Positions 8,989 through 35,989 of a DNA stretch of 36,302 bases are shown one piece after another (position 1 is the stretch's first letter; every line of letters begins with the position of its first letter). The translations under genes and the position numbers were made by a program. The notes under the pieces are model-generated. The model did no database searches, was not told the DNA's origin, and saw only the letters and a program-made list of their open reading frames with translations. This stretch comes from Macrostomum lignano (Eukaryota): the NCBI GenBank assembly GCA_002269645.1, contig NIVC01003036.1, positions 1-36,302 of the forward strand, read 5' to 3'.

Positions 8989-10337
<1,349 letters not shown>

Positions 10338-14000: not shown

Positions 14001-14128
14001 GGTTGCAGATATGAGAGAGGGTGTTAGAATTATTATAAAGAACAGTGCAATGATATTAGTCATATAAGAAACCTTTCAATGTACTCGTATTTGAGAAAAA
14101 ATGTACAATACTGCTAACGTTCTAAGCA

Positions 14129-14683: not shown

Positions 14684-15368
14684 ATGAGCTGCACCTCTGC
14701 ATCTAGCGACGTAAGTTTTGTGACTTCAATTTTGGTGTTTAGATAGATAGATAGATAGATGGATCGATAGATAGATAGATAGATAGATAGATAGAGATAG
14801 ACAGATAGATAGATAGATAGATAGATGGATAGATCTTAACCCATCTCAATCCCATTTCAATCCCACCTCAAATCCCATCTCAATTCCATCTCAATCTCAC
14901 CTCAAATCCCACCTCAATCCCATCTAAATCCCATTTCAATCCCACCTCAATTCCCATCTCAATCCCACCTCAATCCCATCTCAATCCCATCTCCATCCCA
15001 ATTCCAGATGAGCTGCAACGCCAGCAGCTGCAGCAGCGGCAGCCTGGATGAGCAGCGGGAGCTCTTCAAGACTGAGCTGTGCCGCTACTTTGAGGTACAG
15101 TGCAGTGCTGAGTCGAGTACCTGCTCATGTAATCATACCCACCCAGGAACATGCACATGATCCCTTCATTTACCTGCATACCCACCTCTCACCACACTGG
15201 CAGATGGGCAGGCCGTGTCCTTACTCAAGCAGCTGCAAATTCGCTCACGGCCAGTGTGAGCTGAAGCAGCGGCAGAGACCGAGGAACTACAAAACCAAGC
15301 AGTGCCGCTCATTCCACGGGCCGTCAGGGATTTGCAAGTACGGCTCTCGGTGCCAGTTCCTGCACTGA
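14684..15368 (+). CDS. TIS11/TTP-family tandem CCCH zinc-finger microprotein, copy B (92 aa, 3 exons)
   Basis: Exons 14684-14710, 15008-15094 and 15204-15368 with GT-AG sites. LFKTELC...FHGPSGIC...FLH*. AATAAA at 15667-15672. Confidence 0.88.
14741..15000. repeat. Intronic (GATA)n plus ATCTCAATCCC array of copy B
   Basis: Same two repeats as in copy A intron 1, but shorter. Confidence 0.93.
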
Positions 15369-15794
15369 ATAATCGCTAAATGCCCTATGCGCTTCGATTG
15401 CTACTCACAACAGTAGTGTTTTGATATCAGCTGCGAGTGACTGATCTTCAATGATTCTGTAAATATGCTTTCATACCCGCTTCGGCGATTTTCTTACCGT
15501 AGTGTTTTGTTGAGGTTTTATTTATTAATATACATTGCTGTCAAGTCAACGCCTTTCTGCTCCTAATATCCAGCTGTTTAATAATATTTCTATTTGCTTT
15601 GTTGTATTATGGTAATATTTAACTGTATCTGCACCTACGCTGTTCTGTGTGTCATGTCACATTATTAATAAAAGATTTTATTTCTGATCCAATATGAAGT
15701 GCTTGAATGAATTTCAATAGTTTCCTTACCGCGTAAATCAGCTGGTAATGACCAAGATTTAATTTGATCGCTTAAAGACAACTGTGCATTTTAC

Positions 15795-16710
15795 TGCACC
15801 TCCCTGCATCTCCCTGCTCCTCCCTACATCTCCCTGCACCTCCCTACATCCTCTGCGTCCCACTGCATCTCCCTGCACCTCCCTACATCCTCTGCGTCCC
15901 ACTGCATCTCCCTGCACCTCCCTGCATCCTCTGCGTCCCACTGCATCTCCCTGCACCTCCCTACATCTCCCTGCACCTCCCTGCACCTCCCTACATCCTC
16001 TGCGTCCCACTGCATCTCCCTGCACCTCCCTACATCTCCCTGCACCTCCCTGCACCTCCCTACATCTCCCTGCACCTCCCTGCACCTCCCTACATCCTCT
16101 GCGTCCCACTGCATCTCCCTGCACCTCCCTACATCTCCCTGCACCTCCCTACATCTCCCTGCACCTCCCTACATCTCCCTGCACCTCCCTGCACCTCCCT
16201 ACATCTCCCTGCACCTCCCTACATCTCCCTGCACCTCCCTGCACCTCCCTGCATCTCCCTGCACCTCCCTACATCTCCCTGCCCCTCCCTGCACCTCCCT
16301 ACATCCTATGCATCCCCCTGCATCCCCCTGCACCTCCCTACATCTCCCTGCCCCTCCCTGCACCTCCCTACATCCTATTCGTCCCCCTGCACCTCCCTGC
16401 ATCTCCCTGCACCTCCCAACATCTCCCTGCACCTCCCTGCACCTCCCTGCACCTCCCTGCACCTCCCTACATCCTATGCATCCCCCTGCATCTCCCTACA
16501 TCCTATGCATCCCCCTGCACCTCCCTGCACCTCCCTACATCCTATGCATCCCCCTGCACCTCCCTGCACCTCCCTACATCCTATGCATCCCCCTGCACCT
16601 TCCTGCACCTCCCTACATCCTATGCATCCCCCTGCATCTCCCTACATCCTATGCATCCCCCCTGCATCTCCCTGAATCTCCCTATATCCTATGCATCCCC
16701 CTGCATGTGA
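15795..16710. repeat. CA(T/C)CTCCCT(G/A) 10-bp-family minisatellite with CATCCTCTGCGTCCCACTG variants
   Basis: Directly visible downstream of copy B. Confidence 0.95.
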
Positions 16711-17189: not shown

Positions 17190-17850
17190 GTGGAATTGGA
17201 TGCATGGAGATGCTTGGGATGCATGGAGATGCTTGGGATGCAGGGAGATGCTTGGGATGCATGGAGATGCTTGGGATGCAGGGAGATGCTTGGGATGCAG
17301 GGAGATGCTTGGGATGCAGGGAGATGCTTGGGATGCAGGGAGATGCTTGGGATGCAGGGAGATGCTTGGGATGCAGGGAGATGCTTGGGATGCAGGGAGA
17401 TGCTTGGGATGCAGGGAGATGCTTGGGATGCAGGAAGATGCATGGGATGCAAGGAGATGCATGAAAGGTAGGGAGTTACAGGGATGCAGGGAAATCGTGG
17501 GATGCGGGGAGTTGCATGAGATGCAGGAAGATGGATGGGATGCAGGGGCAGGGAGATGCAGGGGATGCAGAGGATGTAGGGAGGTGCAGGGAGATGCAGG
17601 GGACGCAGAGGATGTAGGGAGGTGCAGGGAGATGCAGTGGGACGCAGAGGATGTAGGGAGGTGCAGGGAGGTGCAGGGAGATGTAGGGAGGTGCAGGGAG
17701 ATGCAGTGGGACGCAGAGGATGCAGGGAGGTGCAGGGAGATGCAGTGGGACGCAGAGGATGTAGGGAGGTGCAGGGAGATGCAGTGGGACGCAGAGGATG
17801 TAGGGAGGTGCAGGGAGATGTAGGGAGGAGCAGGGAGATGCAGGGAGGTG
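17190..17850. repeat. Inverted 10-bp-family minisatellite, including a 19-bp GGGATGCAGGGAGATGCTT array
   Basis: 17611-17850 is the reverse complement of 15795-16035, including the order of unit variants. Confidence 0.94.
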
Positions 17851-18278
17851 CAGTAAAATGCACAGTTGTCTTTAAGCGATCAAATTAAATCTTGGTCATT
17901 ACCAGCTGATTTACGCGGTAAGGAAACTATTGAAATTCATTCAAGCACTTCATATTGGATCAGAAATAAAATCTTTTATTAATAATGTGACATGACACAC
18001 AGAACAGCGTAGGTGCAGATACAGTTAAATATTACCATAATACAACAAAGCAAATAGAAATATTATTAAACAGCTGGATATTAGGAGCAGAAAGGCGTTG
18101 ACTTGACAGCAATGTATATTAATAAATAAAACCTCAACAAAACACTACGGTAAGAAAATCGCCGAAGCGGGTATGAAAGCATATTTACAGAATCATTGAA
18201 GATCAGTCACTCGCAGCTGATATCAAAACACTACTGTTGTGAGTAGCAATCGAAGCGCATAGGGCATTTAGCGATTAT

Positions 18279-19512
<1,234 letters not shown>

Positions 19513-20051
19513 TTCCAGAGTGAAAAATTGGTAAATTAAGCACACGGCAGGGAAGAGTTGAGAGTCTTTGTCACAAGCCCAGACCGGCGGACTCAGGGCT
19601 CAGCAACAATGAATAACCAACATTTCTGGTGAGCCTCAGTTTTATGGTGTCTCCCAGGTCGCCAACCCAGCCGCCTCAGGCTGAGTGGAGGCAGCTTCGC
19701 TCCTATTGGCTGGCAGCTCAGAGCCAATGAGAGTCCCCAGCCGCAGCGGGAGGCCGGCCATAGACAGTTGAGCTGCGGAGAGCCGCAAATCCCCCAGCTG
19801 CAGTGACGCTCGGGTTTTCAGCCTGGGAAAACTGCGGCGCAGCGGGGGGCGGCAGCGGCACGAGGCGGGCGCGGCTGCGGCGGCTGCGAGCGCTGCGGGG
19901 GTCGGCGCGACGGCCGGGTGACCCCCCCGGACCCCCGCTGAATGGTGCCAACTCTGTACCGGATGGAATAGCAGTTGGGGTCTGAGGGAATTAGCAGCAG
20001 TTGCTGCTTGCAGAAGGGAATTAACAGGAGGGAAAGGTACAGAGGGTCGAT
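19513..20051 (-). promoter_or_regulatory. GC-rich promoter and 5'UTR block of zinc-finger copy C
   Basis: Reverse complement of 14131-14683; homology stops abruptly at 20051, before a CT-rich tract. Confidence 0.6.
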
Positions 20052-20059
20052 CTCTTTCA

Positions 20060-20153
20060 CTGTCCCTTAATGTCACTGACTGTCTCTCAATTTCTTCTCA
20101 CTGTCCCTCTATCTCCCTCTCACAGTCTCCCTCTCACTGTCTCTATCTCCCTC

Positions 20154-20230: not shown

Positions 20231-21669
20231 TCCTCTCCGCCCTCTCTTCGGCCTGGGGAGAAGCCTTCGGTGACTTGCATTTACTCTCATGTCAGCTACA
20301 GAGTTTTAACTCGAGTTTAGTCACTAACCGCTAATTAGCGCTACATGTAGGATGTCTACAGCTTGGAAACAAGGATTAAAATGTGTTGTTTAATTTCTAA
20401 ACCGGCCGAATTCCGTACCACAACGGAATTTTTGTTTATTTATCTTAACATCCTTTTAAAGACAGCCACCATTTAAGTGTTGGAGATTCGAATTGAAATT
20501 GTGATTTATGATGCGATAATTGGGTGACAATATTTTCTGAAAAGTCGATATGCTCGTTCGAATGTTGTATTGAGGGTGGGGCAAATTTAAAGCATGGATA
20601 CTGCGTTTGTGGTGTTGCGTCACTTTGAAGAATAGACCCAGTGCGGCCTACTAAGCCGCAAATAGCAGCAATATGCTTTTAACAAAACACTCTTTGATAT
20701 TGATGAGATTAATCGAGATGCGGAGAGGTGAGAAGAGAGAGCGGGAGAGAATAGCCGGAGATATGAGTATATGCATCAAAGAAAGTTCAATCAATCCCAA
20801 CCAGGATTCACATCAAGTGATCACAGGTTTTTAATTCACCCAAAGCAATATTTTTTAATACTCAAAGCCCCTGGACCCCCCCCCCCTCCAAGAAGATATA
20901 CAACGGAACAAAAACATTTGTCGCATAACACAACAGGGCATAAAGTATCAAGTTACAGCGCGAGTGCTTATTGTAACAGTCGGAATTGTGCAGTCAAATT
21001 GCAATCTGCAGTGCGGCAAGTCATACGAGCCGTATATCACTTGACGAATGAAGACACGAACCATAAAATATATATTGACAGTAGCTGCATGCCTAACTTT
21101 AACTGCACTCGCTGGCTCCTTTGAGCTCCACCAAGGAGAAGCAGAAATTATAACTTGATACAATTACTCTCTCAGTTCCATGTATCTGCTGCTGGTGGTC
21201 TGGTCTGGTTCGCCCAGAGCCTGTGGCCTGACTTCTCTCTTTCATCAGGATCAACCCAGCCATGCGCTACAAGTATCAAATTGCCAAACCATATCTGGTT
21301 CAGTGGCAGGACCGAACAAACACATCCACGCAAAATCGTCTTCAATGCTTGCAGACTCCTGTAGGCACAGACAAATGTAGCTCAGTGGGGAATCCCAGAG
21401 TCATTGAAGGAAAGAAGTGACTCTCTAGAAGACTAAAATAATCGCATTTCAAATTTTTAGCAACTCTGTTTAGTCTACTTGAGTTAGTAGAGAAGAAATT
21501 TTAGCGCTAATACAACTTTGGACCATTTAAAACACGTAAAGCACTTGTGACTCAACAGTTGCCACTCCATCATCGCATTGCAGTCGTTTGAGTCGTTAAA
21601 AAGTCACAATTGAGTTGCCCCCGAGTCTCTAGAGTCAGTAGTAAGTTGTTTTCTTCAAAATGCTATATG

Positions 21670-22170
21670 ATGAGGGAGATGTAGGGAGATACTGAGGGCA
21701 GATGTAAGGGGATACTGAGGGGATATGCAGGGAGATACTCAGGAGATGTAGGGAGATGCTATGAGATGTGAGGAGATGCTGTGAGGAGATGTAGGGAGAT
21801 GCTGTGAGATGTAGGGAGATACAGTGAGGAGATGTAGGGAGATACAGTGAGGAGATGTAGGGAGATACAGTGAGGAGATGTAGGGAGATACAGTGAGGAG
21901 ATGTAGGGAGATGCTATGAGATGTGAGGAGATGCTGTGAGGATATGTAGGGAGATACAGAGATGTAGGGAGATGCTGTGAGATGTAGGGAGATGTAGGGA
22001 GATACAGTGAGGAGATGTAGGGAGATACAGTGAGGAGATGTAGGGAGATGCTGTGAGATGTAGGGAGATGTAGGGAGATACAGTGAGGAGATGTAGGGAG
22101 ATACAGTGAGGAGATGTAGGGAGATACAGTGAGGAGATGTAGGGAGATGCTGTGAGATGTAGGGAGATAC
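21670..22170. repeat. ~23-bp minisatellite GAGATGTAGGGAGATACAGTGAG
   Basis: Directly visible. Confidence 0.94.
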
Positions 22171-23255: not shown

Positions 23256-24863
23256 TCAACTGGCCAAGTCGAACAGCTGAGGTGCAACACTAACAAGAGC
23301 GGCTTCACCAACACGATTCAACAAAGCCATCACCATGGCAACAGCATCGTTGCTAAGCAAATCAATACCAATCAAAGCCGATCGACTCACTAAAATTGGG
23401 GCAGTAAACAAATGAAACAATTTAATGCTACTCTTCAAATTAGTTAATCCGTTAATCCAATAATTGGGATTATCATCAAATCCGACATGGCCCCTCTGCA
23501 AGCTACTGAGCAGTCTGTGCCAGTTTGGCCTACCAACAGCCAGCACTGTGAGCACAGCTTGAGCAGCAAGGAAAGCGGCCAGCCCAGCATTCGACATGGG
23601 CATATGTGGCCGATAAAATTTCCGATAATAAACCAGATAAGGTAGCACAGCTAGGCAGACAGCTAAACCAATCAGTTCAAGGATGCTGGAGGGATCTGGT
23701 GGGAAATACCTGATGCCAGGAGTGAAGCTGTCAGCTGTCTGAAGAATTGCTACAGCTGGAGACCTGTTTGATTTCTGTGCAGTCTGGTAGTCTATTAGAG
23801 TTCGAAGTTTTTTAACCGAATCCAGTTTGGCCAGGTAGTTGCCGGGCAAAACTGCCAACCAGCTGGCGTGGGGGTCAGCTGAGGTCATGGCTGACAGGCA
23901 CCACAACTGCGACTGGACTCTTGCGCTGGTGCTGCTGCGGTTGCTGCAATAGAAGTGAAAGCAATATTGGTGACGCGATGCGACTGAATGTGATGAGATG
24001 AAGGGATGGTTTACTCTCTCTAATCTCACCTAGTCTCTAGTCTCACCCAGAATGTATCTCACTGTTTCTTTAATCTCACCCAGTCTCTAATCTCACTCAG
24101 AATGTATCTCATTTTTTCTCTAATCTCAACCTGTTTCTAAACTCACCAGTCTCTAATCTCACAGTCTCTAATCTCACAAAACCTGTCTCTAATCTTACAG
24201 TCTCTAATCTAATCTCATCCTGTCTCTGATCTCACCTAGTCTCTAATCTCATCCTGTCTCTAATCTAACCCACTCTCTAATTTTACCTAGTCTCTAATCT
24301 CACCCAGTCTCATACCGATATTAAGAATTAAGAGCGAACCTTTTCGAATCACCCTGCAGCCGTTTCCTTGGCCCCAGCACAGGCAGCGCGGTGCCCCAGG
24401 CGGCAAGGTCGGAGCCCACCACTCCGTCATCGCTGCAGATGAACACCCGCAGGCTGCCAAATCCGCTACTCTGCTTGGCCTCGAAATTGGCTGACAAGAG
24501 CAGAGCGTGAGCAGACCGAGCCAAGCAGCCAGCATCATCAGCTGATGACGTCAGCAAACCAATGGAGAGATTCTGACCATGATTAGTTTTTCTATTGCTG
24601 CTAGACTTGCCAGACAGATAAGACCAGCTGGAACCCGACAGCCGATTAATAAAATTCCTGGCCTCTAGAGATGCGGCATCAGTATGCCTCTTTGACAATC
24701 TTCTATCGCCAATATAATAAGCAGAGCCGGGCATATGACTGCACAGCAATGGCAGCACAATGCAGAACTGCAGCAGCAGTTGCAGAGTCATAATCCTTGT
24801 TGGCAAGCCCATGGTGAAGGTGCGCCACAGCATCTTGTAGGAGAACATCGGCATAAACAGCAT
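23256..24863 (-). CDS. PGAP4: PGAP4/TMEM246-like membrane protein (GPI GalNAc-transferase family) with degenerate catalytic motifs; 2 exons
   Basis: Exons 24863-24340 and 23943-23256, with a phase-2 intron (AG|GTTCGC...TTGCAG|C). Segments match recalled human PGAP4: FCIVLPLLCSHMPGSAYYI ~ FGLLAPLACHRLLHSYFYL; LRVFICS ~ QLFLCN; YFPPDPSSILELIG ~ YINPEPMRILEWVG; VLAVGRPNW ~ VELVGRHYF. Confidence 0.7.
24020..24310. repeat. Degenerate TCTCTAATCTCAC repeat within the PGAP4-like intron
   Basis: TCTCTAATCT recurs about 12 times. Confidence 0.85.
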
Positions 24864-24914
24864 CGCTCTGCATGCATTACAGATTGACACAAATACTACT
24901 GAAATCAGTACTCT

Positions 24915-26075
24915 TGAAAGGGGAATTGGGAAGACTCTTGAAGGGGAATTAAGAAGAATCTTGAAGGGGATTTGGGAAGACTCTTCAAGGGGAATTGGGA
25001 AGACTCCTAAGAGTAATTTGGGAGACTCTTGAAAGGGGAATAGGGAAGACTCTTCAAGGGGAATTGGGAAGACTCCTGAGAGGAATTTGGGAGACTCTTA
25101 AAGGGGAATTGGGAAGACTCTTGAAAGGGGAATTGGGAAGACTCTTCAAGGGGAATTGGGAAGACTCTTGAAAGGGGAATTGGGAAGACTCTTCAAGGGG
25201 AATTGGGAAGACTCTTCAAGGGGAATTGGGAAGACTCTTGAAAGGGGAATTGGGAAGACTCTTGAAGGGGAATTAGGAAGTTTCTTGAAGGGGGAATTGG
25301 GAAAAATCTTGAAGGGGAATTGGGAAGACTCTTGAAGGGGAATTGGGAAGACTCTTGAAGGGGAATTGGGAAGACTCTTGAAGGGAATGGGAAGACTCTT
25401 GAGGGGAATTGGGAAGACTCTTGAAGGGGAATTGGGAAGACTCTTGAAGGGGAATTGGGAAGACTCTTGAAGGGGAATTGGGAAGACTCTTGAAGGGAAT
25501 GGGAAGACTCTTGAGGGGGAATTGGGAAGACTCTTGAAGGGCAATTGGGAAGACTCTTGAGGGGGAATTGGGAAGACTCTTTAAGGGGAATTGGGAAGAC
25601 TCTTGAAGGGGAATTGGGAAGACTCTTGAAGGGGAATTGGGAAGACTCCTGAGGGGGGATTGGGAAGACTCTTGAAGGGAATGGGAAGACTCTTGAAGGG
25701 GAATTGGGAAGTTTCTTGAAGGGGGAATTGGGAAAAATCTTGAAGGGGAATTGGGAAGACTCTTGAAGGGGAATTGGGAAGACTCTTGAAGGGGAATTGG
25801 GAAGACTCTTGAAGGGAATGGGAAGACTCTTGAGGGGGAATTGGGGAGACTCTTGAAGGGGAATTGGGAAGACTCTTGAAGGGGAATTGGGAAGACTCTT
25901 GAAGGGGAATTGGGAAGACTCTTGAAGGGAATGGGAAGACTCTTGAGGGGGAATTGGGAAGACTCTTGAAGGGCAATTGGGAAGACTCTTGAGGGGGAAT
26001 TGGGAAGACTCTTGAAGGGGAATTGGGAAGACTCTTGAAGGGGGATTGGGAAGACTCTCGAAGGGTAATTGGGAA
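24915..26075. repeat. 23-bp minisatellite GGGGAATTGGGAAGACTCTTGAA with a ~431-bp internal higher-order duplication
   Basis: Period 23 (25322/25345). Rare variants GAAAAATCTT (25301/25732) and GGGCAATT (25542/25974) recur at ~431-432 bp. Confidence 0.96.
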
Positions 26076-26484
26076 GAACACATACAGGCGCGGCAATACT
26101 GTACACAGTAACGCACTCATACAGACGCTCACACAGGGTGCACAGCGCGCGCGGCCCTTTGACCTTCTAATCGTCAGACATGTACAGTACAATACAAGTC
26201 AGTAGTACTTAGCGTTTATGTATTGTAATTTTAAAAAGGAAAAATAAGACAACACAAAAACAATAACTAGACTGAGTAGTAAAATGAAAACACGTGAACT
26301 TTTATTTAACGACTCAAACAGACACTTTGGTATTTGGTGTGTTCACCTTTTCAGGCGCAAACATGAGATGTTAGTTAATAGCTAAATTTTATGGTATTAG
26401 GGTTCTTAAACAAATGGTTAGCTAATTTTATCTATGCCATTTCAAACTAACAAGCTGAACACTACAAATAGCATTGTAACTTTT

Positions 26485-26750
26485 CTTAGAAAGCCTAGTG
26501 CTTAGAGCGTCGGGGGTTCGATTCCCGATCCCATTAGGAACAATTTGTGTCCTTGAGCCAGATACTTATAACTCTGCATTGCTTCAGTTCCGCACCCAGC
26601 TGTGAAATGGGTGCCAGCATTAGCTGGGGTAATTGAGGCTGTGTGTGGCGACCCCCCCCCTCCAGTCCTTGGACTGAACAGCCGTACGCAGCCTTCAGAT
26701 GTCGGTTGCACATCTTCCCATTGGGGCAGGTGTATCAAATTATTATTAGT
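26485..26750 (+). mobile_element. tRNA-derived SINE with CORE(MIR)-like central domain
   Basis: A-box-like AAGCCTAGTGC 26491-26501 and B-box GGTTCGATTCC 26515-26525. The following GTGTCCTTGAGCCAGATACTT...CTTCAGTT...CAGCTGTGAAATGGG resembles the recalled CORE consensus. (TTA)n-like tail at ~26740. Confidence 0.7.
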
Positions 26751-26868
26751 AACTAAATGAGGATCTGGCATTTAAAGATTTAAATTTAAGAAAAACTAAA
26801 AATATTCATATCTCACTACTCATTACTTGCATAACATATAGTAGTACTAATTCAGACAGACGCAATGT

Positions 26869-27363
26869 TTATTTAACATCATCAAAGCTAGGCGCAGACC
26901 CAGACTCAATATCCTGGATAAATGATTTATAATAAGCCTCGTATCTCTTGGCGCAGCGCATGACGTCATTGTGCGTGTCCTCGAATGCCCTCCTAGCATT
27001 GGGGTCGTCAAACGCTGAGTCATCTTTCAACAAGCCGTCAATCTGGGCCATAAACTTTCGGAAGTAGAGGCCGCACGGTCCCGTGACGTACTTGGCCACG
27101 CAGCCGCAGTGCCAGTTGTAGCTGCCGTCCGGCCGCTTGAACCCCGGCAGGCTGTACTTCGTGTCGATGTCAAAGTAGTTGGTCATCGACATGGTGGGAT
27201 AGGCGTCCCGGCGGGACAAGAAGGTGGCCACGTTAGCGGGACGGTTGGGTCCGCCAGGGATCTGCTTGGACCAGGAAGATCTCTGATCCTCACTGGGCAG
27301 CACCGGCGGCTGCTGCTCTGCGACTGGTTCCGCTTTTGTTGCAGTTGCAGGAGATGAAGACAT
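26869..27363 (-). CDS. CHCHD4: MIA40/CHCHD4-like protein (164 aa), divergent: CGC instead of CPC and the inner CX9C cysteines lost
   Basis: [29 protein letters not shown] aligns with recalled MIA40 [39 protein letters not shown] ~ QECMQKYPDLY. Intronless CDS with GC3-rich codons; acceptor CTGCAG| 3 nt before the ATG. Confidence 0.8.
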   Translation of the reverse strand: [164 protein letters not shown]

Positions 27364-27384
27364 TTGCTGCAGTCAGGAAGGATC

Positions 27385-27880
27385 GAATTGGGGAGATTCT
27401 TGATGGGGATTGGGGAGATTCTTGGAGGAAATTAAGAAGATTCTTGAATGGAATCGGGAAGATTCTTGAAGGGGAGTTGGGGAGATTCTTGAATGGGAGT
27501 TGGGGAGATTCTTGAATGGGAGTTGGGGAGATTCTTGAAGAGAAATTGGGGAGATTCTTGATGGGGATTGGGGAGATTCTTGAAGAGAAATTGGGGATGG
27601 GGAGATTCTTTAAGAGAAGTTGGGGAGCTTCTTGAAGAGAAATTGGGGAGATTCTTAAAAGGGAATTGGGAAGATTCTTAAATGGGAATTGGGAAGATTC
27701 TTAAATGGGAATTGGGAAGATTCGTAAAGGGGAGTTAGGGAGATGCTTGAATGGGAATTGGGGAGATTCTTAAAGGGGAGTTGGGGAGATTCCTAAAGAG
27801 GAATTAGGGAGATTCTTGAAGGGGATTCGGGGAGATTCTTGAAAGGGATTTGGGGAGATTCTTAAAGGGGAATTTTGGAA
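27385..27880. repeat. Degenerate ~23-bp minisatellite GGGGAGATTCTTGAAGGGGAATT, same family as 24915-26075
   Basis: Shared GGG(G)AATTGGG(A/G)AGA(C/T)TCTTGAA consensus in the same orientation. Confidence 0.9.
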
Positions 27881-28169
27881 ATACAAAGATATTAGGAAAA
27901 AATAAAATAATTTGATATAACAACAGGAACTGGAAACATATAAAGGCCTAAAAAAGCATTTTGAACATCTGCAGATCCTTTATTTTATCATTTTTATTTT
28001 TGAAAATTTAACTAAAAAGTTTTTAATCTTGTGTTTTGTTAAAATGCTGAATATTTCATGTATTAATGACATTAAAACGGCAACAGCAGTTCCATGCTTA
28101 GGAAGTGGCTCGAGCCGATAAATAGGTAGGATTTGAGAAGCTGGAAGTGGCCCAGCAACTCACACTCAT

Positions 28170-28680
28170 GGAGGCTGGATGAGCAACTGAGGATCTGGGA
28201 GGCTGGCCCAGCAACTGAGGATCTGGGAGGCTGGATGAGCAACTGAGGATCTGGGAGGCTGGATGAGCAACTGAGGATCTGGGAGGCTGGATGAGCAACT
28301 GAGGATCTGGGAGGCTGGATGAGCAACTGAGGATCTGGGAGGCTGGATGAGCAACTGAGGATCTGGGAGGCTGGCAAAGCAACTGGGGATCTGGGAGGCT
28401 GGCAAAGCGACTGGGGATCTGGGAGGCTGGCAAAGCAACTGGGGATCTGGGAGGCTGGCAAAGCAACTGGGGATCTGGGAGGCTGGCAAAGCAACTGGGG
28501 ATCTGGGAGGCTGGCAAAGCAACTGAGGATCTGGGAGGCTGGTGGCCCAGCAACTGAGGATCTGGGAGGCTGGCCCAGCAACTGAGGATCTGGGAGGCTG
28601 GCCCAGCAACTGAGGATCTGGGAGGCTGGCCCGGCAACTGAGGATCTGGGAGGCTGGCCCGGCAACTGAGGATCTGAGAG
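28170..28680. repeat. 28-bp minisatellite GCAACTGAGGATCTGGGAGGCTGG(ATGA/CAAA/CCCA)
   Basis: GCAACT at 28211, 28239 and onward; variants occur in blocks. Confidence 0.96.
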
Positions 28681-28855
28681 GCTGAAAGTTTCATAGTCAC
28701 GGAACTCAATAAAAACCACTCAACGCACAATTTCACAAAACAACAACACTAAATCTATGGTATTCCTACAGCAAAGCCACTAAAAACGTATCATACTACT
28801 GCATGGAGAAGAGTAGCACAGTTCAGTAAAAAACGCATTTCCATAAAACACGACA

Positions 28856-29209
28856 TCAACTCGCTTCCCCCTTGCCAACTTTATTGAACAGCCTGTTGTA
28901 GTCATTCTTATCGAAAATTCTACTGGGAGCAGACGGGGCCAGCGGCTCCAGACCGCCTGCGGATGATGAGGCTTCAGCGGCAGCAGCTGCAGCTTCCCGA
29001 AGCAGTCGCTCGTCTCGTTGATCAGCCACTGACTTGTCTCGGCGGGCCGCTGCCTCCTGCGACTCTAAACTCGCTGGCGAGGTGAACAAGCGCTCAGCGT
29101 TGTAGCCAATGATGCCGATGACTACGGCGAATGGAAATGCGATTGCGTTGGCAACTGGACCGGCTCGGGCCATGAAAGTGCGCATCGCTTGCAGGATTAC
29201 GGGTAGCAT
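28856..29209 (-). CDS. SMIM12: Small integral membrane protein 12 (UPF0767) homologue, 117 aa
   Basis: MLPVILQAMRT...FPFAVVIGIIGYNAE ~ recalled MWPVFWTVVRT...FPVAFVVGAVGYHLE; KSVADQRDERLLRE ~ KSISERREDRKLDE. One TM helix; acceptor TCCCAG| 10 nt before the ATG. Confidence 0.88.
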   Translation of the reverse strand: MLPVILQAMRTFMARAGPVANAIAFPFAVVIGIIGYNAERLFTSPASLESQEAAARRDKSVADQRDERLLREAAAAAAEASSSAGGLEPLAPSAPSRIFDKNDYNRLFNKVGKGEAS

Positions 29210-29284
29210 TGTTGCTTAGCTGGGACATGAATGGTGACGATATGTATCGAAAATACACATTGAATGAGTTTTAAATGAAATACA

Positions 29285-30660
29285 ATTGGGATTTCCCTAA
29301 ATCCTAAATAACCGAATGGAATTTCCCCAAATCCTAAATAACCGAATGGGATTTCCCCAAATCCTAAATAACCGAATGGGCTTTTCTTAAACCCTAAATA
29401 ACCGAATGAGATTTTTCCAAATCCCGAATACTCAATAGGGATTTCCCCAAATCCTAAATAACCGAATAGATTTCACCAAATCCTAAATAACCGAATGAGA
29501 TTTCCACAAATCCTAAATAACCGAATCAATGGGATTTCCTTAAATCCTGAATAACCGAATGAGATTTCCCCAAATCCTAAATAATTGAATGGGATTTCCC
29601 CAAATCCTGAATACTCAATAGGGATTTCCCCGAATCCTAAATAACCGAATGGGATTTCCCCAAATCCTGAATACTCAATAGGGATTTCCCCGAATCCTAA
29701 ATAACCGAATGGGATTTCCCCAAATCCTGAATACTCAATAGGGATTTCCCCGAATCCTAAATAAACGAATGGGATTTCCCCAAATCCTGAATACTCAATA
29801 GGGATTTCCCCGAATCCTAAATAACCGAATGGGATTTCCCCGAATCCTAAATAACCGAATGGGATTTCCCCAAATCCTAAATAACCGAATCAATGGGATT
29901 TCCCCAAATCCTAAATAGCCGAATAGATTTTACCAAATCCTAAATAACCGAATGGGATTTCCCCAAATCCTGAATACTCAATAGGGATTTCTCCGAATCC
30001 TAAATAACCGAATGGGATTTCCCCAAATCCTGAATACTCAATAGGGATTTCTCCGAATCCTAAATAACCGAATGGGATTTCCCCAAATCCTGAATACTCA
30101 ATAGGGATTTCTCCGAATCCTAAATAACCGAATGGGATTTCCCCAAATCCTGAATACTCAATAGGGATTTCCCCGAATCCTAAATAACCGAATGGGATTT
30201 CCCCGAATCCTAAATAACCGAATGGGATTTCCCCAAATCCTGAATACTCAATAGGGATTTCTCCGAATCCTAAATAACCGAATGGGATTTCCCCAAATCC
30301 TGAATACTCAATAGGGATTTCCCCGAATCCTAAATAACCGAATGGGATTTCCCCGAATCCTAAATAACCGAATGGGATTTCCCCAAATCCTAAATAACCG
30401 AATCAATGGGATTTCCCCAAATCCTAAATAGCCGAATAGATTTTACCAAATCCTAAATAACCGAATGGGATTTCCCCAAATCCTGAATACTCAATAGGGA
30501 TTTCTCCGAATCCTAAATAACCGAATGGGATTTCCCCAAATCCTGAATACTCAATAGGGATTTCCCCGAATCCTAAATAAACGAATGGGATTTCCCCAAA
30601 TCTTGAATACTCAATAGGGATTTCCCCGAATCCTAAATAACCGAATGGGATTTCCGCTAA
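29285..30660. repeat. 30-bp minisatellite with 60-bp dimeric higher-order repeat (CCTAAATAACCGAATGGGATTTCCCCAAAT / CCTGAATACTCAATAGGGATTTC(C/T)CCGAAT)
   Basis: Lines 29641 and 29701 are identical 60-mers; no unique spacers. Confidence 0.97.
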
Positions 30661-31459
30661 ATCCTGCATTTTACCACGGACAAAAAATTAAAACTAGTCA
30701 GATGTAGAACAACTGCTAATTAAAGTTTATTTGGCAACAATGATCAATGAATTACGATCTTTTAAAGCAATACATAAACATATATATGCATTAAAATTTT
30801 TACAAAAAAAATTTGTTAAAGGAAGAGGTGTGAAACAAAAAAAATTAAGTAACTAGCTAGTAAGTAAAACAAGCACTTCAGCTGCATATCAAAGTGCTTT
30901 ACGATGGTTTTTGGTATTAAAAAAAAGTGACTGCAAAAATAAGGAAAACAGAGTAATGACATTGGAACAGAACAATAGCCACAACCACACCCGACACCAG
31001 TAACAGCCAACTATGAAAAAAAACAACCAACACAAAATTGAAAGACGATGTTAAAAAAAACAAACACAGACTCAAAAAAGGTCCCCGAAGTTCCGTTTGA
31101 ATTAAAACATAACCAACACAACAGTAAAACAGGGAAGCATTTATGTGGAGAGATTTTCAAATTCCACAAACTGGAATAACGATCCTTTTAATTGAAGAAT
31201 TGAAAATAATAACACAACATATCGGTAGAATGTCTAAAAGCAGGCAAAACATTTGTGCAGGAAAAAATTAAAATACAATTATTGTCAAGGAAAATAGGAC
31301 TATATTATTTAATAAATATATCAAATATTATGCGCTTAATTAAGGAAAACTACAAATTGCAAGAGACTGAAAATCAGCAGCCAACAAACCCGCATGAGTC
31401 CAAAACTCATTGCTTGCATACAAGCAATCACTGATAAGCATGTGTTCGGGCCGCTGTAC

Positions 31460-31880
31460 ATGCATGGGATGCAGGGAGATGCAGGAAGATTTAGGGAGAT
31501 GTAGGAAGATGCAGGGACATGAAAGAGATGTAGGGAAATGCAGGGAGATGCAGTGAGATGCATGGGATGTAGGGAGATGCAGGGAGATGTAGGGAGATGC
31601 AGGGAGATGTAGGGAGATGCAAGGAGATTGATGGGATGTAGGGAGATGCAGGGAGATGCATGGGATGTAGGGAGATGCAGGGAGATGCATGGGATGTAGG
31701 GAGATGCAGGGAGATGCAGGGGATGTAATGAGATGCAGGGAGATGTAGGGATATGCATGGGATGTAGGGAGATCCATGGGATGCAGGGAGATGCATGGGA
31801 TGTAGGGAGATGCAGGGAGATGTAGGGAGATGCATGGGATGTAGGGAGATCCATGGGATGCAGGGAGATGCAGGGAGATG
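31460..31880. repeat. GGGAGATG(C/T)A 10-bp-family minisatellite in the DDHD1-like 3' region
   Basis: Reverse-complement relative of the CATCTCCCTG arrays. Confidence 0.93.
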
Positions 31881-32041
31881 AGCACTGTTAGCTTCTAATC
31901 TTTAGTATTTCAGATACCGCAATGACCAAAATTTGTTCATAGATGAAAAAATGAATTTTTGACTGCCAATAAACAAGTAAATAAGTAAATAAACAAACAA
32001 ATAAACATTTGCCAGCCCGTCAATCATTGAAACTCAGTCGA

Positions 32042-35000
32042 TCATCGCTTCGGAATGCCAATAGGCCCATAGTCAGGGAACAGGTGACTCATAATAAACA
32101 GAGCAATATCTTCATGACTCCAATAGGCGGTGTGACTGGTGAGCACACTTACATATGAGGACTCATAGCGGCCTTCTCTCAGCTGATAGTCCAGTCTGTG
32201 CTCAAGTTCGGTCCTGTGCTGCATCGAGTCGTACACATTTACAGCCGGCCGACTACTGTTCGAGGCTGGCGCAGCCTCTCCATTAGCTTCATCAGCGCCC
32301 AGCATCAGATCATCGGCAGCATCTTCAACGTAGTTGCTAGCAAAAGTTTTCAGTTCCGACATGACGGGAGGCCCAGTTGAGCTGACTGAGACTGCTGTAG
32401 CTGAAGCTGACGACGCCACGGAACCGCTGGCAGATGCAGTCTTGCGAAAGCTCGAAAGTCTGGATGGACTGTAGGCTGAGTCACCTGATGGAGACGGCAG
32501 CTGCGGCGGCTGCTGCTGCCCCTTGCCAGTGAATCTTGACAGAAACGTGTTGAACCGGTCTAGGGGTGAGAAATACAGATAGTGACACATAATCACAGAT
32601 AATCACATAATCACAGATAATCACATAATCACAGATAATCACAGATAATCACACAATCACAGATAATCACATAATCACAGATAATCACATAATCACAGAT
32701 AATCACATAATCACAGATAATCACACATAATCACACAATCACAGATAATCACATAATCACAGATAATCACATAATCACAGATAATCACATAATCACAGAT
32801 AATCACACATAATCACAGATAATCACAGACAATCACAGATAATCACATAATCACAGATAATCACACATAATCACAGATAATCACAGACAATCACAGATAA
32901 TCACATAATCACAGATAATCACACATAATCACAGATAATCACAGACAATCACAGATAATCACATAATCACAGATAATCACATAATCACAGATAATCACAG
33001 ATAATCACACAATCACAGATAATCACATAATCACAGATAATCACAGATAATCACACAATCACAGATAATCACATAATCACAGATAATCACACAGCGGCTC
33101 TTTGACTTTCTAATCGTCAGGCGTGAGAGCACAGGAAGGCTGGATATACAATAATAAAATAGCGACTGTCACTACGTCAAGCATCGATTTGGAAAAAGCA
33201 ATATAAACCAGTAAATTGTTAAATAATTTTGCTACCAATTCTTTATAATAGATAAAAATTATTTAGAAATTAGAGCCCAGATAAAATGGGAAAAATGATT
33301 TTTTTATTAGCTAAAACCTTAAATATTATAAAAACTATGAACCAGAGTAGTTTATAATGAGAGTTTATATATTGCGAAAATATATTGCACATCTATCTTC
33401 TACAAGCTAAACTTTAGTATTGATAGATTACTGTAAGCCAGTAAAAGGATTACCAATGTATTCTGAAATAATATAACAAAAATACTAAGAAAGTATAGAT
33501 AATAAAATTTAAATTTAATATGCAAATTTGTGCGAATAAAATTATTTGCAAAGGATATCTACCATGCCAAATTAGTGTTGGATAACATGCAAACTAATTG
33601 AAGGTCTAATGTACATCTAGGGTGGGGTTGTGGGGGCTAGTGTACATCTAGGGTGGGGTTGTGGGGGCTAGTGTACATCTAGGGTAGGTTTGTGGGGCTA
33701 GTGTACATCTAGGGTAGGTTTGTGGGGCTAGTGTACATCTAGGGTGGGGATGTGGGGAGCCAGTGTACATCTAGGGTGGGGATGTGGGGAGCCAGTGTAC
33801 ATCTAGGGTGGGGTTGTGGGGAGCCAGTGTACATCTAGGGTGGGGATGTGGGGAGCCAGTGTACATCTAGGGTGGGGATGTGGGGAGCCAGTGTAGATCT
33901 AGGGTGGGGTTGTGGGGAGCCAGTGTACATTTAGGGTGGGAATGTGGGGAGCCAGTGTACATCTAGGGTGGGGATGTGGGGAGCCAGTGTACATCTAGGG
34001 TGGGGTTGTGGGGAGCCAGTGTACATCTAGGGTTAGATTGTGGGGTTTAAAATCATTGGAAATCATTTATAAAATTAAATGCATTCACTAACACAAGTAC
34101 ATATAAATGCACACATATAACCAATGATGGAACATAAAGATTCAGATATAGCACAACATTAATCAGGATTTTAAAACACACAACAGCATAAAACAAAATC
34201 ACACATCGGCGGTGAAACGAACCTGACAGTGAGGCATCGCTAGCCACAGCTCTTAGAGTGGCTGGGTGTTCTGTTACGGCACACACTTGGCCTGATATTT
34301 GGTAGTTAATGCACGCAATATTAATGATAGCAAGGAAAGCTATAGGGCATAGGCGTAGGGATAGACCAGATTTATCGGTCTGTAGTTAAATATGGCTGAC
34401 TATGGGTTTTTTAGAAGGTAAGAAATTAGATAATCGATAAAAATTAGATAACTAAGGGAGGTAGCTCGTAATTAATTAAGCATGTATTTAGAATTTTACT
34501 GAATAAACGGTAAATAAATTATATTTTTTATATTGACAACTTAAATAATCAATTAAAATTGAGAGAGATGGGAGGAGAGACGCAGATGGAGAGGGGTGGG
34601 AGAGGGGATGGAGGGGAGACAGGAAGATTAGAGAGCCGACCGGTAGATAGTAGGGGAGAGGATGGAGGTGGAGAGAGGTAGAAAGTAGATAGGGGGGAGA
34701 AAGGTAAAATGATGGGGGTGGGAGATAGGAGGGAACAAAGAGGAAATGGGAGGGAGAGAGGGAAATGGGAGGGAGAGAGGGTGATGAGAGGGAGAGAGGG
34801 AACTGGGAGGGAAGAGGGAGATGAGAGGGAGAGAGGGAGATGGGAGGGAGAGAGGGAGATGAGAGGAGAGAGGGAGATGGGAGGGAAGAGGAGATGAGAG
34901 GGAGAGAGGAGAGATGAGAGGGAGAGAGGGAGATGAGAGGGAGAGAGGGAGATGGGAGGGAGAGAGGGAGATGAGAGGAGAGAGGGAGAATGGGAGGGAA

Positions 35001-35907
35001 GAGGTTGATGAGAGGGCGAGAGGGAAATGGGAGGGAAGAGGGAGATGAGAGGGAGAGAGGGAGATGAGAGGGAGAGAGGGAGATGGGAGGGAGAGAGGGA
35101 GATGAGAGGGAGAGAGGGAGATGAGAGGGAGAGAGGGAGATGGGAGGGAAGAGGGAGATGAAGGAGAGAGAGGGAGATGGCAGGGAAGAGGGAGAGAGGG
35201 AGATGGAGGGAGAGAGGGAGGGAGAGAGGGAGATGAGAGGGAGAGGGAGATGGGAGGGAGAGAGGGAGATGGAGGGAGAGAGGGAGATGGGAGGAGAGAG
35301 GGAGATGGGAGGAGAGAGAGGGAATGGGAGGGAGAGAGGGAGATGAGAGGGAGAGAGGAGAGATGGGAAATGGCAGGGAAGAGGGAGAGAGGGAGATGGG
35401 AGGGAAGACACAAATTCAGCAATTCGTCGGCAGAGAAACACCGAAACCCGGAGCTGTGGCCAGCAAGTATCGGGGGGGGGAGCTCAAAGACACGAGTACA
35501 ACCCCGGAGGAACTCACTAATACTGCTAGGCTTGTCTCCGCTGCAGCTGCAATATCGGAGGCATCGAGAGCGCTGGAGTCCTGGCCGGAGCCGCCGCCGC
35601 AAGCTCCGGTGTCGCTGTGCCGAGACGAGAGCTCGTCAAAGTTCAACTCCGGCGGTGACGAGTCGCCAGAGTGCAGCAGAAGATGAGCAGCAGCGAACTG
35701 TTGCTGTTGTTGTTGTTGTTGTTGCTGCTGCTGTTGCTTCCGCTGGCGTTGGCCACTAGGAGAAGAGGCTGCAGCAGCCATGCTTTGGTGAAGCGGCTCC
35801 TGAGGCAGAGTGTGATACGGCGGCTTGTTCATGGCGTCGACTCGGTGGATGTGCACCGGCTGGATGGTGGAGTAGTGCTTCAGGATCAGCGGCTCCAGAC
35901 GGTAGGC
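32042..35907 (-). CDS. DDHD1: DDHD1-like phospholipase A1, 3' exons carrying the DDHD domain; 5' part lies beyond the window end
   Basis: Exon 35907-35518 (TTAAG|AYRLEPLILKHYSTIQPVHIH..., donor GTGAGT) and last exon 32559-32042 (HRLDYQLREGRYESSYVSVLTSHTAYWSHEDIALFI ~ recalled DDHD1 HRIDFELREGLVESRYWSAVTSHTAYWSSLDVALFL). A tentative middle exon 34379-34223 (phase 0 to 1) reconciles the phases. Candidate AATAAA at 30731-30726. Confidence 0.88.
32585..33090. repeat. Intronic ATAATCAC(AG) 8/10-bp minisatellite
   Basis: Directly visible. Confidence 0.96.
33610..34040. repeat. Intronic 30-32-bp minisatellite TAGGGTGGGG(A/T)TGTGGGGAGCCAGTGTACATC
   Basis: GTGTACAT at 33731, 33763 and onward; three G-tracts per unit. 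Confidence 0.95.
34560..35405. repeat. Intronic purine-rich GAGAGGGAGATG(A/G)GAGG repeat
   Basis: Almost exclusively G/A on the plus strand. Confidence 0.93.
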
Positions 35908-35989
35908 CTTAAGAAAAATAAGTTAAAAAAATCAATTCTAGACGTGAGATTTGTACTTTTATGGCAATTAGTTATAGGAGATATAGATT

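What the first reader, a model, noticed from the sequence alone, without database searches (positions are those of the whole stretch)
23256..35907. Candidate trans-spliced operon DDHD1-SMIM12-MIA40-like-PGAP4-like with minisatellite-filled intercistronic spacers
Seen: four unrelated genes are co-oriented on the minus strand. Each downstream gene has a YAG acceptor 10, 3 and 4 nt before its ATG (29221-29220, 27368-27367, 24869-24868). The layout is repeated three times: upstream AATAAA (30731, 27984, 26306), 60-230 nt of unique DNA, a 0.5-1.4 kb satellite, then acceptor-ATG. This leaves almost no room for promoters. Known: SL trans-splicing resolves polycistrons in flatworms, nematodes and tunicates. 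Inference: an operon of organelle-membrane genes whose spacers have been inflated by satellites. Weak cis donors exist in two spacers, so 5'UTR introns are not excluded.
Basis: partly seen in the sequence, partly recalled or inferred. Interest (0 to 1): 0.7.

Follow-up and report, generated by a model that had tools for sequence, protein, structure and literature searches.

The report
Flatworm operon with satellite-filled spacers
This is a stretch of the flatworm Macrostomum lignano genome in which three (perhaps four) unrelated same-strand genes are most likely read as one long transcript and cut apart by spliced-leader trans-splicing, with tandem repeats padding the gaps; this layout has already been published for the species, so it is real but ordinary.

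Summary
The window is scaffold NIVC01003036.1 of the Macrostomum lignano Mlig_3_7 assembly. On the minus strand lie the 3' third of a DDHD phospholipase gene, SMIM12 (UPF0767), a divergent MIA40-like gene and a PGAP4-like gene. CAG acceptors lie 10, 3 and 4 nt before the three downstream ATGs.

M. lignano has one 35-nt spliced leader. About 15% of its genes are assigned to operons, and a 2021 paper reports that repeats inflate operon spacers (repeat-adjusted mode about 100 bp, cut-off 1 kb). Here the repeat-free remainders are 112, 107 and 250 nt. In a paralogous copy, GenBank names PGAP4-like, MIA40-like and SMIM12 as g4, g5 and g6 of one transcriptional unit. Two deposited coding regions (CDSs) are 5'-partial and begin 2 and 6 nt from the predicted acceptors.

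I could not reach RNA reads, so no leader junction was seen. Whether DDHD1 belongs to the unit is unproven, and its promoter is off the contig. No shared "organelle-membrane" function is evident. Tandem repeats cover 49% of all non-coding DNA in the window, so satellites are not specific to the spacers.

Verdict: already known, low interest.

The parts
32042..35913 (-). 3' part of a DDHD-domain phospholipase (DDHD1-like) gene. Exon matches lie at about 35913-35854 and 35631-35545, and the last exon is about 32569-32042. The introns are filled with satellites (34720-35405, 33610-34045, 32575-33091). The 5' two-thirds of the gene and its promoter are off the contig.
   Evidence: Pfam DDHD 1.5e-15. 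tblastn of fused model P0005 to the window. Deposited CDS fragment 32362-32042, 106 aa.
30712..32041 (-). Putative DDHD1 3'UTR, AT-rich, containing a 10-mer satellite at 31460-31880. It ends with AATAAA at 30731-30726 followed by a U-rich stretch. Alternative ATTAAA signals lie at 31313 and 31192.
   Evidence: Poly(A) site use is inferred, not shown.
29287..30665 (-). Spacer 1 minisatellite, 30-nt unit, 45.6 copies. The two paralogous copies have 49.6 and 59.6 copies.
29220..29221 (-). Proposed SL trans-splice acceptor AG (tcccAG|) for SMIM12, 10 nt before the ATG.
   Evidence: Sequence. Partial match to the published [T/C]TNCAG motif.
28856..29209 (-). SMIM12 (UPF0767) CDS, 117 aa, no intron.
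   Evidence: Pfam PF15990 1.2e-12, aligned from profile position 1. Deposited CDS.
27965..28855 (-). Putative SMIM12 3'UTR with a 28-mer satellite at 28170-28684 and AATAAA at 27984-27979 (also at 27998).
27385..27874 (-). Spacer 2 minisatellite, 23-nt unit, 21.2 copies (22.2 and 23.2 in the paralogous copies). It is the same repeat family as spacer 3.
27367..27368 (-). Proposed SL acceptor AG (ctgcAG|) for the MIA40-like gene, 3 nt before the ATG. It fully matches [T/C]TNCAG. The terminal AUG of the leader would be in frame (MQMSSS...).
26869..27363 (-). MIA40-like CDS, 164 aa, no intron. It has CGC in place of the CPC redox motif and only four cysteines.
   Evidence: phmmer against PDB: human MIA40 2K3J, E = 9.7e-5, residues 63-106. 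The deposited CDS starts at 27372.
26078..26868 (-). Putative MIA40-like 3'UTR plus the unique part of spacer 3. AATAAA lies at 26306-26301, with an alternative at 26873 overlapping the stop codon. A GTGAG candidate cis donor lies at 26132-26128.
24910..26077 (-). Spacer 3 minisatellite, 23-nt unit, 51 copies (56 and 41 in the paralogous copies).
24868..24869 (-). Proposed SL acceptor AG (atgcAG|) for the PGAP4-like gene, 4 nt before the ATG.
   Evidence: The deposited 'partial' CDS starts at 24869.
23256..24863 (-). PGAP4-like CDS. Exon 1 is 24863-24340 and exon 2 is 23943-23256. The intron 24339-23944 runs GT...AG and holds a 17-mer satellite at 24016-24311. The product is 403 aa from the ATG.
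   Evidence: The splice reconstruction reproduces the deposited 405-aa product exactly. Hydrophobic segments at 22-45, 259-281 and 293-314.

Best explanation
This is a spliced-leader-resolved polycistronic unit (an operon) of Macrostomum lignano.

Proposed mechanism:
- RNA polymerase II starts upstream, either at the DDHD1 promoter (off the contig) or possibly just upstream of SMIM12. It then reads through SMIM12, the MIA40-like gene and the PGAP4-like gene.
- Each upstream cistron is cleaved and polyadenylated after its AATAAA (30731, 27984, 26306).
- The single 35-nt M. lignano leader, which ends in ...GCAUG, is trans-spliced onto the CAG acceptors at 29220, 27367 and 24868. This gives capped monocistronic mRNAs with 5'UTRs of leader plus 10, 3 or 4 nt.
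- The minisatellites between poly(A) site and acceptor are neutral padding discarded with the intercistronic RNA. Their copy number drifts while the roughly 110-250 nt of unique spacer stays fixed.

Shown: the sequence anatomy, the species, the published class of such operons, and the annotators' grouping of three of the genes.

Inferred: use of these exact acceptors and poly(A) sites, co-transcription in this particular copy, and inclusion of DDHD1.
For: 1. Species. The window is NIVC01003036.1 of M. lignano assembly GCA_002269645.1.
2. Published class. In this species 30% of genes carry one 35-nt leader and 15% are assigned to operons. Trans-acceptors have the motif [T/C]TNCAG. Repeats inflate operon spacers, and after subtracting repeats the mode is about 100 bp with a 1 kb cut-off (PMC8629364).
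3. Spacer lengths here. From the poly(A) site to the acceptor the spacers are 1491, 597 and 1418 nt. They are 82-92% tandem repeat, leaving 112, 107 and 250 nt.
4. Annotation. On the paralogous scaffold the consecutive proteins PAA80272-4 are Mlig023451g4, g5 and g6: PGAP4-like, MIA40-like and SMIM12. The authors call multi-gene RNA-seq-assembled transcripts precursor 'transcriptional units' and name the genes prefix.gN (PMC5730564).
5. Transcript boundaries. The deposited PGAP4-like CDS is named 'partial' and starts at 24869. The MIA40-like CDS starts at 27372. The transcript models therefore begin at the acceptors rather than at upstream exons. The authors' boundary-cutting pipeline (TBONE) uses only leader and poly(A) signals for cutting.
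6. Chance. A CAG within 3-10 nt of all three ATGs has a probability of about 0.4%.
7. Copy comparison. Across three copies the unique spacer DNA is constant (137, 125 and 270 nt between anchors). Satellite copy numbers vary: 45.6/49.6/59.6, 21.2/22.2/23.2 and 51/56/41.
8. Donors. No consensus cis donor lies in spacer 1, and only one lies in the region between a poly(A) signal and its acceptor (26132).
Against: - No leader-bearing read or bridging RNA could be examined. The protein collections hold no RNA-derived copies of these genes.
- The shared name prefix is given to transcripts clustered at 95% identity, so it shows that some assembled transcript spans the three genes. It does not show that the window's own copy does.
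- The DDHD1 locus tag was not recovered. The numbering g4-g6 hints at three genes per unit, which would leave DDHD1 out.
- About 790 nt of unique AT-rich DNA after the DDHD1 stop could hold a promoter for SMIM12.
- Only 1 of 3 acceptors fully matches [T/C]TNCAG.
- The deposited partial CDS starts lie 2 and 6 nt upstream of the predicted first exon base, with no AG in front of them. This is unexplained.
- For SMIM12 and PGAP4-like the leader's AUG would open out-of-frame ORFs of 42 and 55 codons.
Confidence: 0.75

Rival explanations
1. Each gene, or at least SMIM12, has its own promoter in the unique spacer DNA or in the satellite. Each is trans-spliced as a monocistronic pre-mRNA whose outron contains the satellite. 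The genes are neighbours but not an operon.
For: - By the published figures (30% of genes trans-spliced, about 40% of those in operons) most SL-spliced genes lie outside operons.
- About 790 nt of unique AT-rich DNA lies between the DDHD1 stop-proximal satellite and spacer-1 satellite, with ATTAAA at 31313 and 31192 that could end DDHD1 early.
- The g4-g6 numbering suggests the annotators' unit has three genes, not four.
Against: - Three of the genes share one transcriptional-unit prefix in the deposited annotation.
- Spacers 2 and 3 leave only 107 and 250 nt of non-repeat DNA, and that DNA must also hold the upstream poly(A) downstream elements.
- The distances fit the published operon mode.
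Confidence: 0.15
2. These are conventional genes with a short non-coding first exon in the unique spacer DNA. The satellite would be a 5'UTR intron that is cis-spliced onto the CAG just before the ATG. For PGAP4-like the donor would be GTGAG at 26132 and the acceptor 24868.
For: - A consensus GT[G/A]AG donor lies at 26132, between AATAAA 26306 and the satellite, in a GC-rich patch.
- GTGAG at 28163 lies upstream of the MIA40-like acceptor.
Against: - Spacer 1 has no GT[AG]AG donor at all.
- The donor at 28163 lies before the SMIM12 poly(A) signal, inside its 3'UTR.
- Three donors in about 2.3 kb of unique spacer DNA is no more than my rough chance estimate, assuming equal base frequencies (2/1024 per position, about 4.6).
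- The deposited transcript models start at the acceptors and carry no upstream exon. That is why the CDSs are 5'-partial.
Confidence: 0.06
3. The arrangement is coincidental. The ATG-proximal AGs and the co-orientation are chance features of a repeat-rich region and have no shared transcription or trans-splicing behind them.
For: - Tandem repeats fill 49% of all non-coding DNA in the window.
- A YAG lies 3-10 nt upstream of 24% of ATGs.
Against: - The joint probability of three CAGs is about 0.4%.
- The annotators' transcript boundaries fall at these acceptors.
- The three downstream genes share one transcriptional-unit prefix.
Confidence: 0.03

Closest known systems
Macrostomum lignano operons with repeat-inflated intergenic regions (Ustyantsev & Berezikov 2021, PMC8629364; transcriptional units of Wudarski et al. 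2017, PMC5730564)
   Same: - Same species and same assembly.
- Same single 35-nt leader and same orientation rule.
- Intercistronic distance is about 100-250 nt once repeats are subtracted.
- Operon size of 3-4 genes falls within the published 2-9 range.
- The genes are already grouped under one transcriptional-unit prefix in GenBank.
   Different: Nothing substantive. This locus is not singled out in the papers (one search found no mention of Mlig023451). DDHD1 may or may not be part of the annotated unit.
Caenorhabditis elegans SL2-type operons
   Same: Co-oriented, functionally unrelated genes. The upstream poly(A) signal is followed by a U-rich stretch and then a trans-splice acceptor close to the downstream ATG. 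The effective spacer is about 100 nt. This comparison rests on established knowledge.
   Different: - C. elegans uses a dedicated SL2 leader for downstream genes and has physical spacers of about 100 nt.
- Here a single leader serves all genes.
- The physical spacers are 0.6-1.9 kb and vary in length between gene copies because of satellites.
Operons of Schistosoma mansoni, Ciona and Oikopleura
   Same: A single leader is used both for monocistronic genes and for downstream cistrons. In flatworms the leader ends in AUG. This rests on established knowledge; the M. lignano leader sequence is.
   Different: In those taxa intercistronic regions are very short, and few operons are known in Schistosoma. 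Here the spacers are kilobase-scale in raw length.

Membership tests
M. lignano SL-resolved operon (criteria of PMC8629364) | Immediately adjacent genes on the same strand with no opposite-strand gene between them | tested here: met
   Four minus-strand genes lie between 35913 and 23256. The plus-strand ORFs in this span are repeat-derived or antisense to a CDS.
M. lignano SL-resolved operon (criteria of PMC8629364) | Repeat-adjusted intergenic distance below 1 kb (mode about 100 bp) | tested here: met
   112, 107 and 250 nt remain after subtracting tandem-repeat arrays, measured from the inferred poly(A) sites. The distance stays below 1 kb if the alternative poly(A) signals are used.
M. lignano SL-resolved operon (criteria of PMC8629364) | The downstream gene carries the 35-nt leader (leader-containing reads at its 5' end) | not testable with these tools
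   No RNA reads are accessible. Indirect evidence only: the deposited 5'-partial CDSs begin at 24869 and 27372, which is 2 and 6 nt from the CAG acceptors.
M. lignano SL-resolved operon (criteria of PMC8629364) | [T/C]TNCAG motif at the trans-splice acceptor | tested here: inconclusive
   CTGCAG (MIA40-like) is a full match. TCCCAG (SMIM12) and ATGCAG (PGAP4-like) each differ at one position.
M. lignano SL-resolved operon (criteria of PMC8629364) | An assembled precursor transcript (transcriptional unit) spans the genes | tested here: inconclusive
   Locus tags Mlig023451g4, g5 and g6 cover PGAP4-like, MIA40-like and SMIM12 on the paralogous scaffold, following the naming rule. The window's own tags are hidden and the DDHD1 tag was not recovered.
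DDHD phospholipase A1 family | DDHD domain | tested here: met
   PF02862, 1.5e-15 on the last exon. Assignment to DDHD1 rather than DDHD2 or SEC23IP was not tested.
SMIM12 / UPF0767 | Match to the family profile from its first position | tested here: met
   PF15990, 1.2e-12, 48.2 bits against a cut-off of 27. Residues 1-78 align to profile positions 1-63.
MIA40 / CHCHD4 | Sequence similarity to the MIA40 core | tested here: met
   Human MIA40 2K3J, E = 9.7e-5, residues 63-106 aligned to 34-77. Yeast MIA40 2ZXT is a weak hit.
MIA40 / CHCHD4 | CPC redox-active motif | tested here: not met
   The aligned motif is C-G-C: NWHCGC against NWNCPC.
MIA40 / CHCHD4 | Twin CX9C motifs (four structural cysteines) | tested here: not met
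   Only two further cysteines are present, in GPCG and MRCAK. By spacing they fit the outer disulfide pair. The inner pair is absent (sequence; human disulfide numbering from established knowledge).
PGAP4 (TMEM246) GPI-GalNAc transferase | Three transmembrane domains, with a tandem pair inserted at about residues 262-308 | tested here: met
   Hydrophobic segments at 22-45, 259-281 and 293-314 compare with human TM2/TM3 at 262-308 (PMC5785973).
PGAP4 (TMEM246) GPI-GalNAc transferase | EDD (DXD-like) donor-binding motif, essential in human PGAP4 | tested here: not met
   The window protein has P-G-N where P0015 (an M. lignano paralogue) and P0016 have E-D-D. The motif's role is described.
PGAP4 (TMEM246) GPI-GalNAc transferase | Detectable homology to characterised PGAP4 proteins | tested here: inconclusive
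   There is no Pfam, NCBIfam or PDB match. Only four relatives turned up among 1.84 billion representative proteins. P0016 has a weak MGAT4_cons hit, E = 0.0026. No vertebrate PGAP4 sequence was compared.

The most novel reading that the evidence does not exclude
The satellites may not be mere padding. Kilobase-long intercistronic arrays that differ in length between gene copies might carry a function, for example as internal promoters, polymerase pausing sites or anti-termination elements.

Alternatively, their tolerance may reveal that a one-leader flatworm protects the downstream pre-mRNA over more than 1 kb after upstream cleavage. That would be a mechanism unlike the short, Ur-element/SL2-coupled spacers of C. 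elegans.
Probability: 0.08. Interest if true: 0.55.

Novelty: already known. Interest (0 to 1): 0.15.

Why it matters
It matters little as a discovery. Both the class (operons in M. lignano whose spacers are swollen by repeats) and, for three of the genes, the locus itself are already in the literature and in the GenBank annotation.

It does serve as a clean worked example. Three near-identical copies show the unique spacer DNA held exactly constant while satellite copy number changes by up to about 18 units. This argues that physical intercistronic length is not constrained in this species.

One question remains open. After upstream cleavage, how does polymerase II continue for 0.6-1.9 kb to reach the next acceptor when only one leader type exists? 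This locus, or ones like it, could address that question using the transgenesis already established for M. lignano.

Tried and rejected
1. Direct RNA evidence. Exact look-ups of the window proteins returned only the genome assembly, with no RNA-seq-derived contigs. The 90% cluster of the MIA40-like protein has five members, none of them fused to the leader. Trans-splicing therefore could not be seen directly.

2. Locus tags in the literature. Mlig023451 and Mlig018815 appear in no paper text and in none of the held supplements.

3. DDHD1 locus tag. The last homology search returned only UniRef models of the older annotation.

4. Leader gene. The leader sequence, down to its last 12 nt, is absent from the window. 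Rfam and ARAGORN found nothing.

5. PGAP4 identity by profile. Pfam, NCBIfam and PDB sequence searches gave nothing for the window protein or for P0016. Structure prediction was not run because it does not bear on the operon question.

6. The old 738-aa fused model P0005 (DDHD + SMIM12 + MIA40-like). I considered it as evidence for bridging RNA. By my reading of its junctions against the window sequence, they need a weak donor and a non-AG acceptor plus a frameshift. It looks like a gene-prediction artefact on the earlier assembly and I did not use it as evidence.

7. A shared 'organelle-membrane' function. I found nothing to support it. DDHD, SMIM12, MIA40-like and PGAP4-like are four unrelated protein families, and I ran no test for a shared function.

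Full report
**What the window is.** An exact-sequence look-up placed the MIA40-like ORF in a cluster with GenBank proteins of Macrostomum lignano. The SMIM12 ORF is encoded on NIVC01003036.1, a 36,302-bp scaffold of assembly GCA_002269645.1 (Mlig_3_7). The window is that whole scaffold. Two near-identical copies of the locus exist, on NIVC01002236.1 (locus L001) and NIVC01000591.1 (locus L004). This fits the known large-scale duplication in the sequenced line (PMC5730564; PMC8629364).

**Checking the observation.**
- On the minus strand the contexts are ttcatgtcccAG|CTAAGCAACA-ATG (AG 29221-29220, ATG 29209), tcctgactgcAG|CAA-ATG (AG 27368-27367, ATG 27363) and taatgcatgcAG|AGCG-ATG (AG 24869-24868, ATG 24863).
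- Minus-strand AATAAA starts at 30731, 27984 and 26306. Further signals lie at 26873 (overlapping the MIA40-like stop), 27998, and ATTAAA at 31313 and 31192. Each of the three chosen signals is followed by a U-rich stretch (read directly).
- Tandem Repeats Finder gives the three spacer arrays as 29287-30665 (30-mer), 27385-27874 (23-mer) and 24910-26077 (23-mer).
- A CAG 3-10 nt upstream is found at 16% of non-repeat ATGs on this strand, so three out of three is about 0.4% by chance.

Two qualifications apply:
- Only the 3' third of the DDHD gene is present. The contig ends at 36302 inside a satellite, so the promoter of the first gene is not in the window.
- Tandem repeats cover 45% of the window and 49% of its non-coding DNA, against 15% simple plus tandem repeats genome-wide. 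They fill the DDHD introns (55%), the PGAP4-like intron (75%) and two 3'UTRs. Satellite filling is therefore the local background, although the spacers are more extreme at 82-92%.

**The genes.**
- The last DDHD exon matches Pfam DDHD (1.5e-15), and the 117-aa ORF matches UPF0767/SMIM12 from profile position 1 (1.2e-12).
- The 164-aa ORF has no Pfam hit and no relatives outside M. lignano in the word-indexed search. It does match human MIA40 (2K3J, E = 9.7e-5) across the redox motif, with CGC in place of CPC. It keeps only two of the four structural cysteines (sequence).
- The fourth gene has two exons (24863-24340 and 23943-23256) and a GT...AG intron carrying a satellite. This reconstruction reproduces the deposited 405-aa product exactly.
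- Its PGAP4 label rests on architecture. Hydrophobic segments at 22-45, 259-281 and 293-314 compare with human PGAP4 TM2/TM3 at 262-308. It also shows 24% identity to an unnamed protein (P0016, from a public sequencing run) that carries the EDD motif.
- The window protein has PGN where P0016 and an M. lignano paralogue (P0015) have EDD. Human PGAP4 requires that motif for activity. It may therefore be an inactive paralogue.

**What it most likely is.** M. lignano uses one 35-nt spliced leader, CGGTCTCTTACTGCGAAGACTCAATTTATTGCATG.
- About 30% of its genes are trans-spliced and about 15% are assigned to operons of two to nine genes. Trans-acceptors show [T/C]TNCAG.
- The authors found that repeats inflate the distances between trans-spliced neighbours. 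After subtracting repeats the main mode is about 100 bp, and they used 1 kb as the operon cut-off (PMC8629364).
- Applying their rule here, the distances from the inferred poly(A) sites to the acceptors are 1491, 597 and 1418 nt. Of these, 112, 107 and 250 nt are not tandem repeat.
- One acceptor (CTGCAG) matches the motif fully. The other two (TCCCAG, ATGCAG) differ at one position each.

**Evidence from the deposited annotation.** Wudarski et al. assembled RNA-seq into 'transcriptional units'. They found that almost 7% are precursor RNAs with several trans-splice sites. They cut these into genes using only leader-read peaks and poly(A) reads, and named the genes prefix.g1, prefix.g2 and so on (PMC5730564).
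- On NIVC01000591.1 the consecutive accessions PAA80272.1, PAA80273.1 and PAA80274.1 are Mlig023451g4 (PGAP4-like, 'partial'), g5 (MIA40-like) and g6 (SMIM12). At least one assembled precursor transcript therefore spans these three genes.
- The PGAP4-like CDS is 5'-partial and starts at 24869. The window's MIA40-like CDS starts with Leu at 27372. The transcript models thus begin at the acceptors, not at an upstream exon.

**Comparison of the three copies.** Anchoring on unique sequence, the non-repeat part of each spacer is identical in length in all three copies: 137, 125 and 270 nt between anchors. The acceptor and poly(A) contexts are 98-100% identical. The arrays, by contrast, have 45.6/49.6/59.6, 21.2/22.2/23.2 and 51/56/41 units. 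The satellites behave as freely expanding and contracting filler, which fits the published 'neutral accumulation' view.

**What remains unproven.**
- I could not see RNA. No RNA-derived contigs or proteins for these genes are in the collections.
- The DDHD1 tag was not recovered. The numbering g4-g6 for three genes hints that the annotated unit has three genes per copy.
- The roughly 790 nt of unique AT-rich DNA after the DDHD1 stop-proximal satellite could be either a long 3'UTR ending at AATAAA 30731 or a shorter 3'UTR followed by a promoter for SMIM12. I put DDHD1 membership at a little over even odds.
- The 2- and 6-nt offsets between the deposited CDS starts and the predicted first exon bases are unexplained. 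No AG precedes them. They may reflect leader-tail bases aligning to leader-like genomic bases, but that is speculation.
- The leader's terminal AUG would be in frame for MIA40-like (MQMSSS...). For SMIM12 and PGAP4-like it would open out-of-frame ORFs of 42 and 55 codons.

**Rivals.**
- Independent promoters with satellite-bearing outrons are the main alternative, particularly at the DDHD1/SMIM12 boundary.
- A cis-spliced 5'UTR exon is possible for PGAP4-like (GTGAG at 26132). However, spacer 1 has no consensus donor, the donor at 28163 lies inside the SMIM12 3'UTR, and the deposited models carry no upstream exon.
- Pure coincidence is unlikely.

**Verdict.** It is an instance of something already described for this species and already reflected in the GenBank annotation, so novelty and interest are low. 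I found nothing to support the suggested functional theme.

Noticed in passing
window 4830-6945 (+): An unrelated plus-strand gene or gene pair. JHBP (PF06585, 1.4e-24 and 3.9e-13) is split by an intron filled with 12-mer satellites (5405-5898). A Group-7-allergen-like domain follows (PF16984, 5.3e-26) at 6334-6945.
   Followed up: partly
window 23256-24863 (-); proteins P0006, P0015, P0016: The PGAP4-like protein has P-G-N where its M. lignano paralogue P0015 and the distant relative P0016 have E-D-D. Human PGAP4 needs this donor-binding motif. Its C-terminal HxGLYS-like stretch is also degenerate. It may be a catalytically inactive paralogue.
   Followed up: partly
window 26869-27363 (-): The MIA40-like protein has CGC instead of CPC and only one of the two structural cysteine pairs. 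If the leader joins at 27367|27366, the leader's own AUG is in frame and would add Met-Gln to the protein.
   Followed up: partly
window 27372 and 24869 (-): The deposited 5'-partial CDS features start 6 and 2 nt upstream of the first exon base predicted from the CAG acceptors, with no AG in front of them. In L001 and L004 base 27377 is A (tcATGactgcag), and the L004 CDS is called complete. This is unexplained.
   Followed up: partly
window 27385-27874 and 24910-26077: The satellites of two consecutive spacers are one 23-nt family (about 77-80% identical across arrays) in the same orientation. No 23-nt array with this unit is listed anywhere else in the window.
   Followed up: partly
window 7993-10680, 13712-15704, 17195-20054: A segment of about 2.7 kb is present three times: directly repeated at 13712-15704 (86-90%) and inverted at 20054-17943 (88-96%). 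The stretches 14138-16477 and 20054-17195 form a large inverted repeat. It carries near-identical ORFs at 14101-14478 (+) and 19642-20076 (-) with no Pfam match.
   Followed up: partly
whole window: Tandem repeats cover 45% of this scaffold, against 15% simple plus tandem repeats reported genome-wide. A 10-mer family (GATGCAGGGA and its complement) recurs in many arrays on both strands, for example 10801-11199, 15794-16706, 17198-17853, 21669-22170 and 31460-31880.
   Followed up: no
proteins P0005 and P0014 (older M. lignano annotation): A 738-aa UniParc model fuses DDHD + SMIM12 + MIA40-like into one protein. It does so through junctions that, by my reading against the window sequence, are not canonical splice sites, plus a frameshift. 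Another model fuses an Ig-like protein to the first 38 residues of the PGAP4-like protein. Both are likely prediction artefacts caused by polycistronic layout on the earlier assembly.
   Followed up: partly
window about 26500-26545 (-), in the MIA40-like 3'UTR: A string that is the reverse complement of a tRNA T-arm-like sequence (gggatcgggaatcgaaccccc), suggesting a SINE fragment antisense to the genes. Neither ARAGORN nor Rfam calls anything here.
   Followed up: partly
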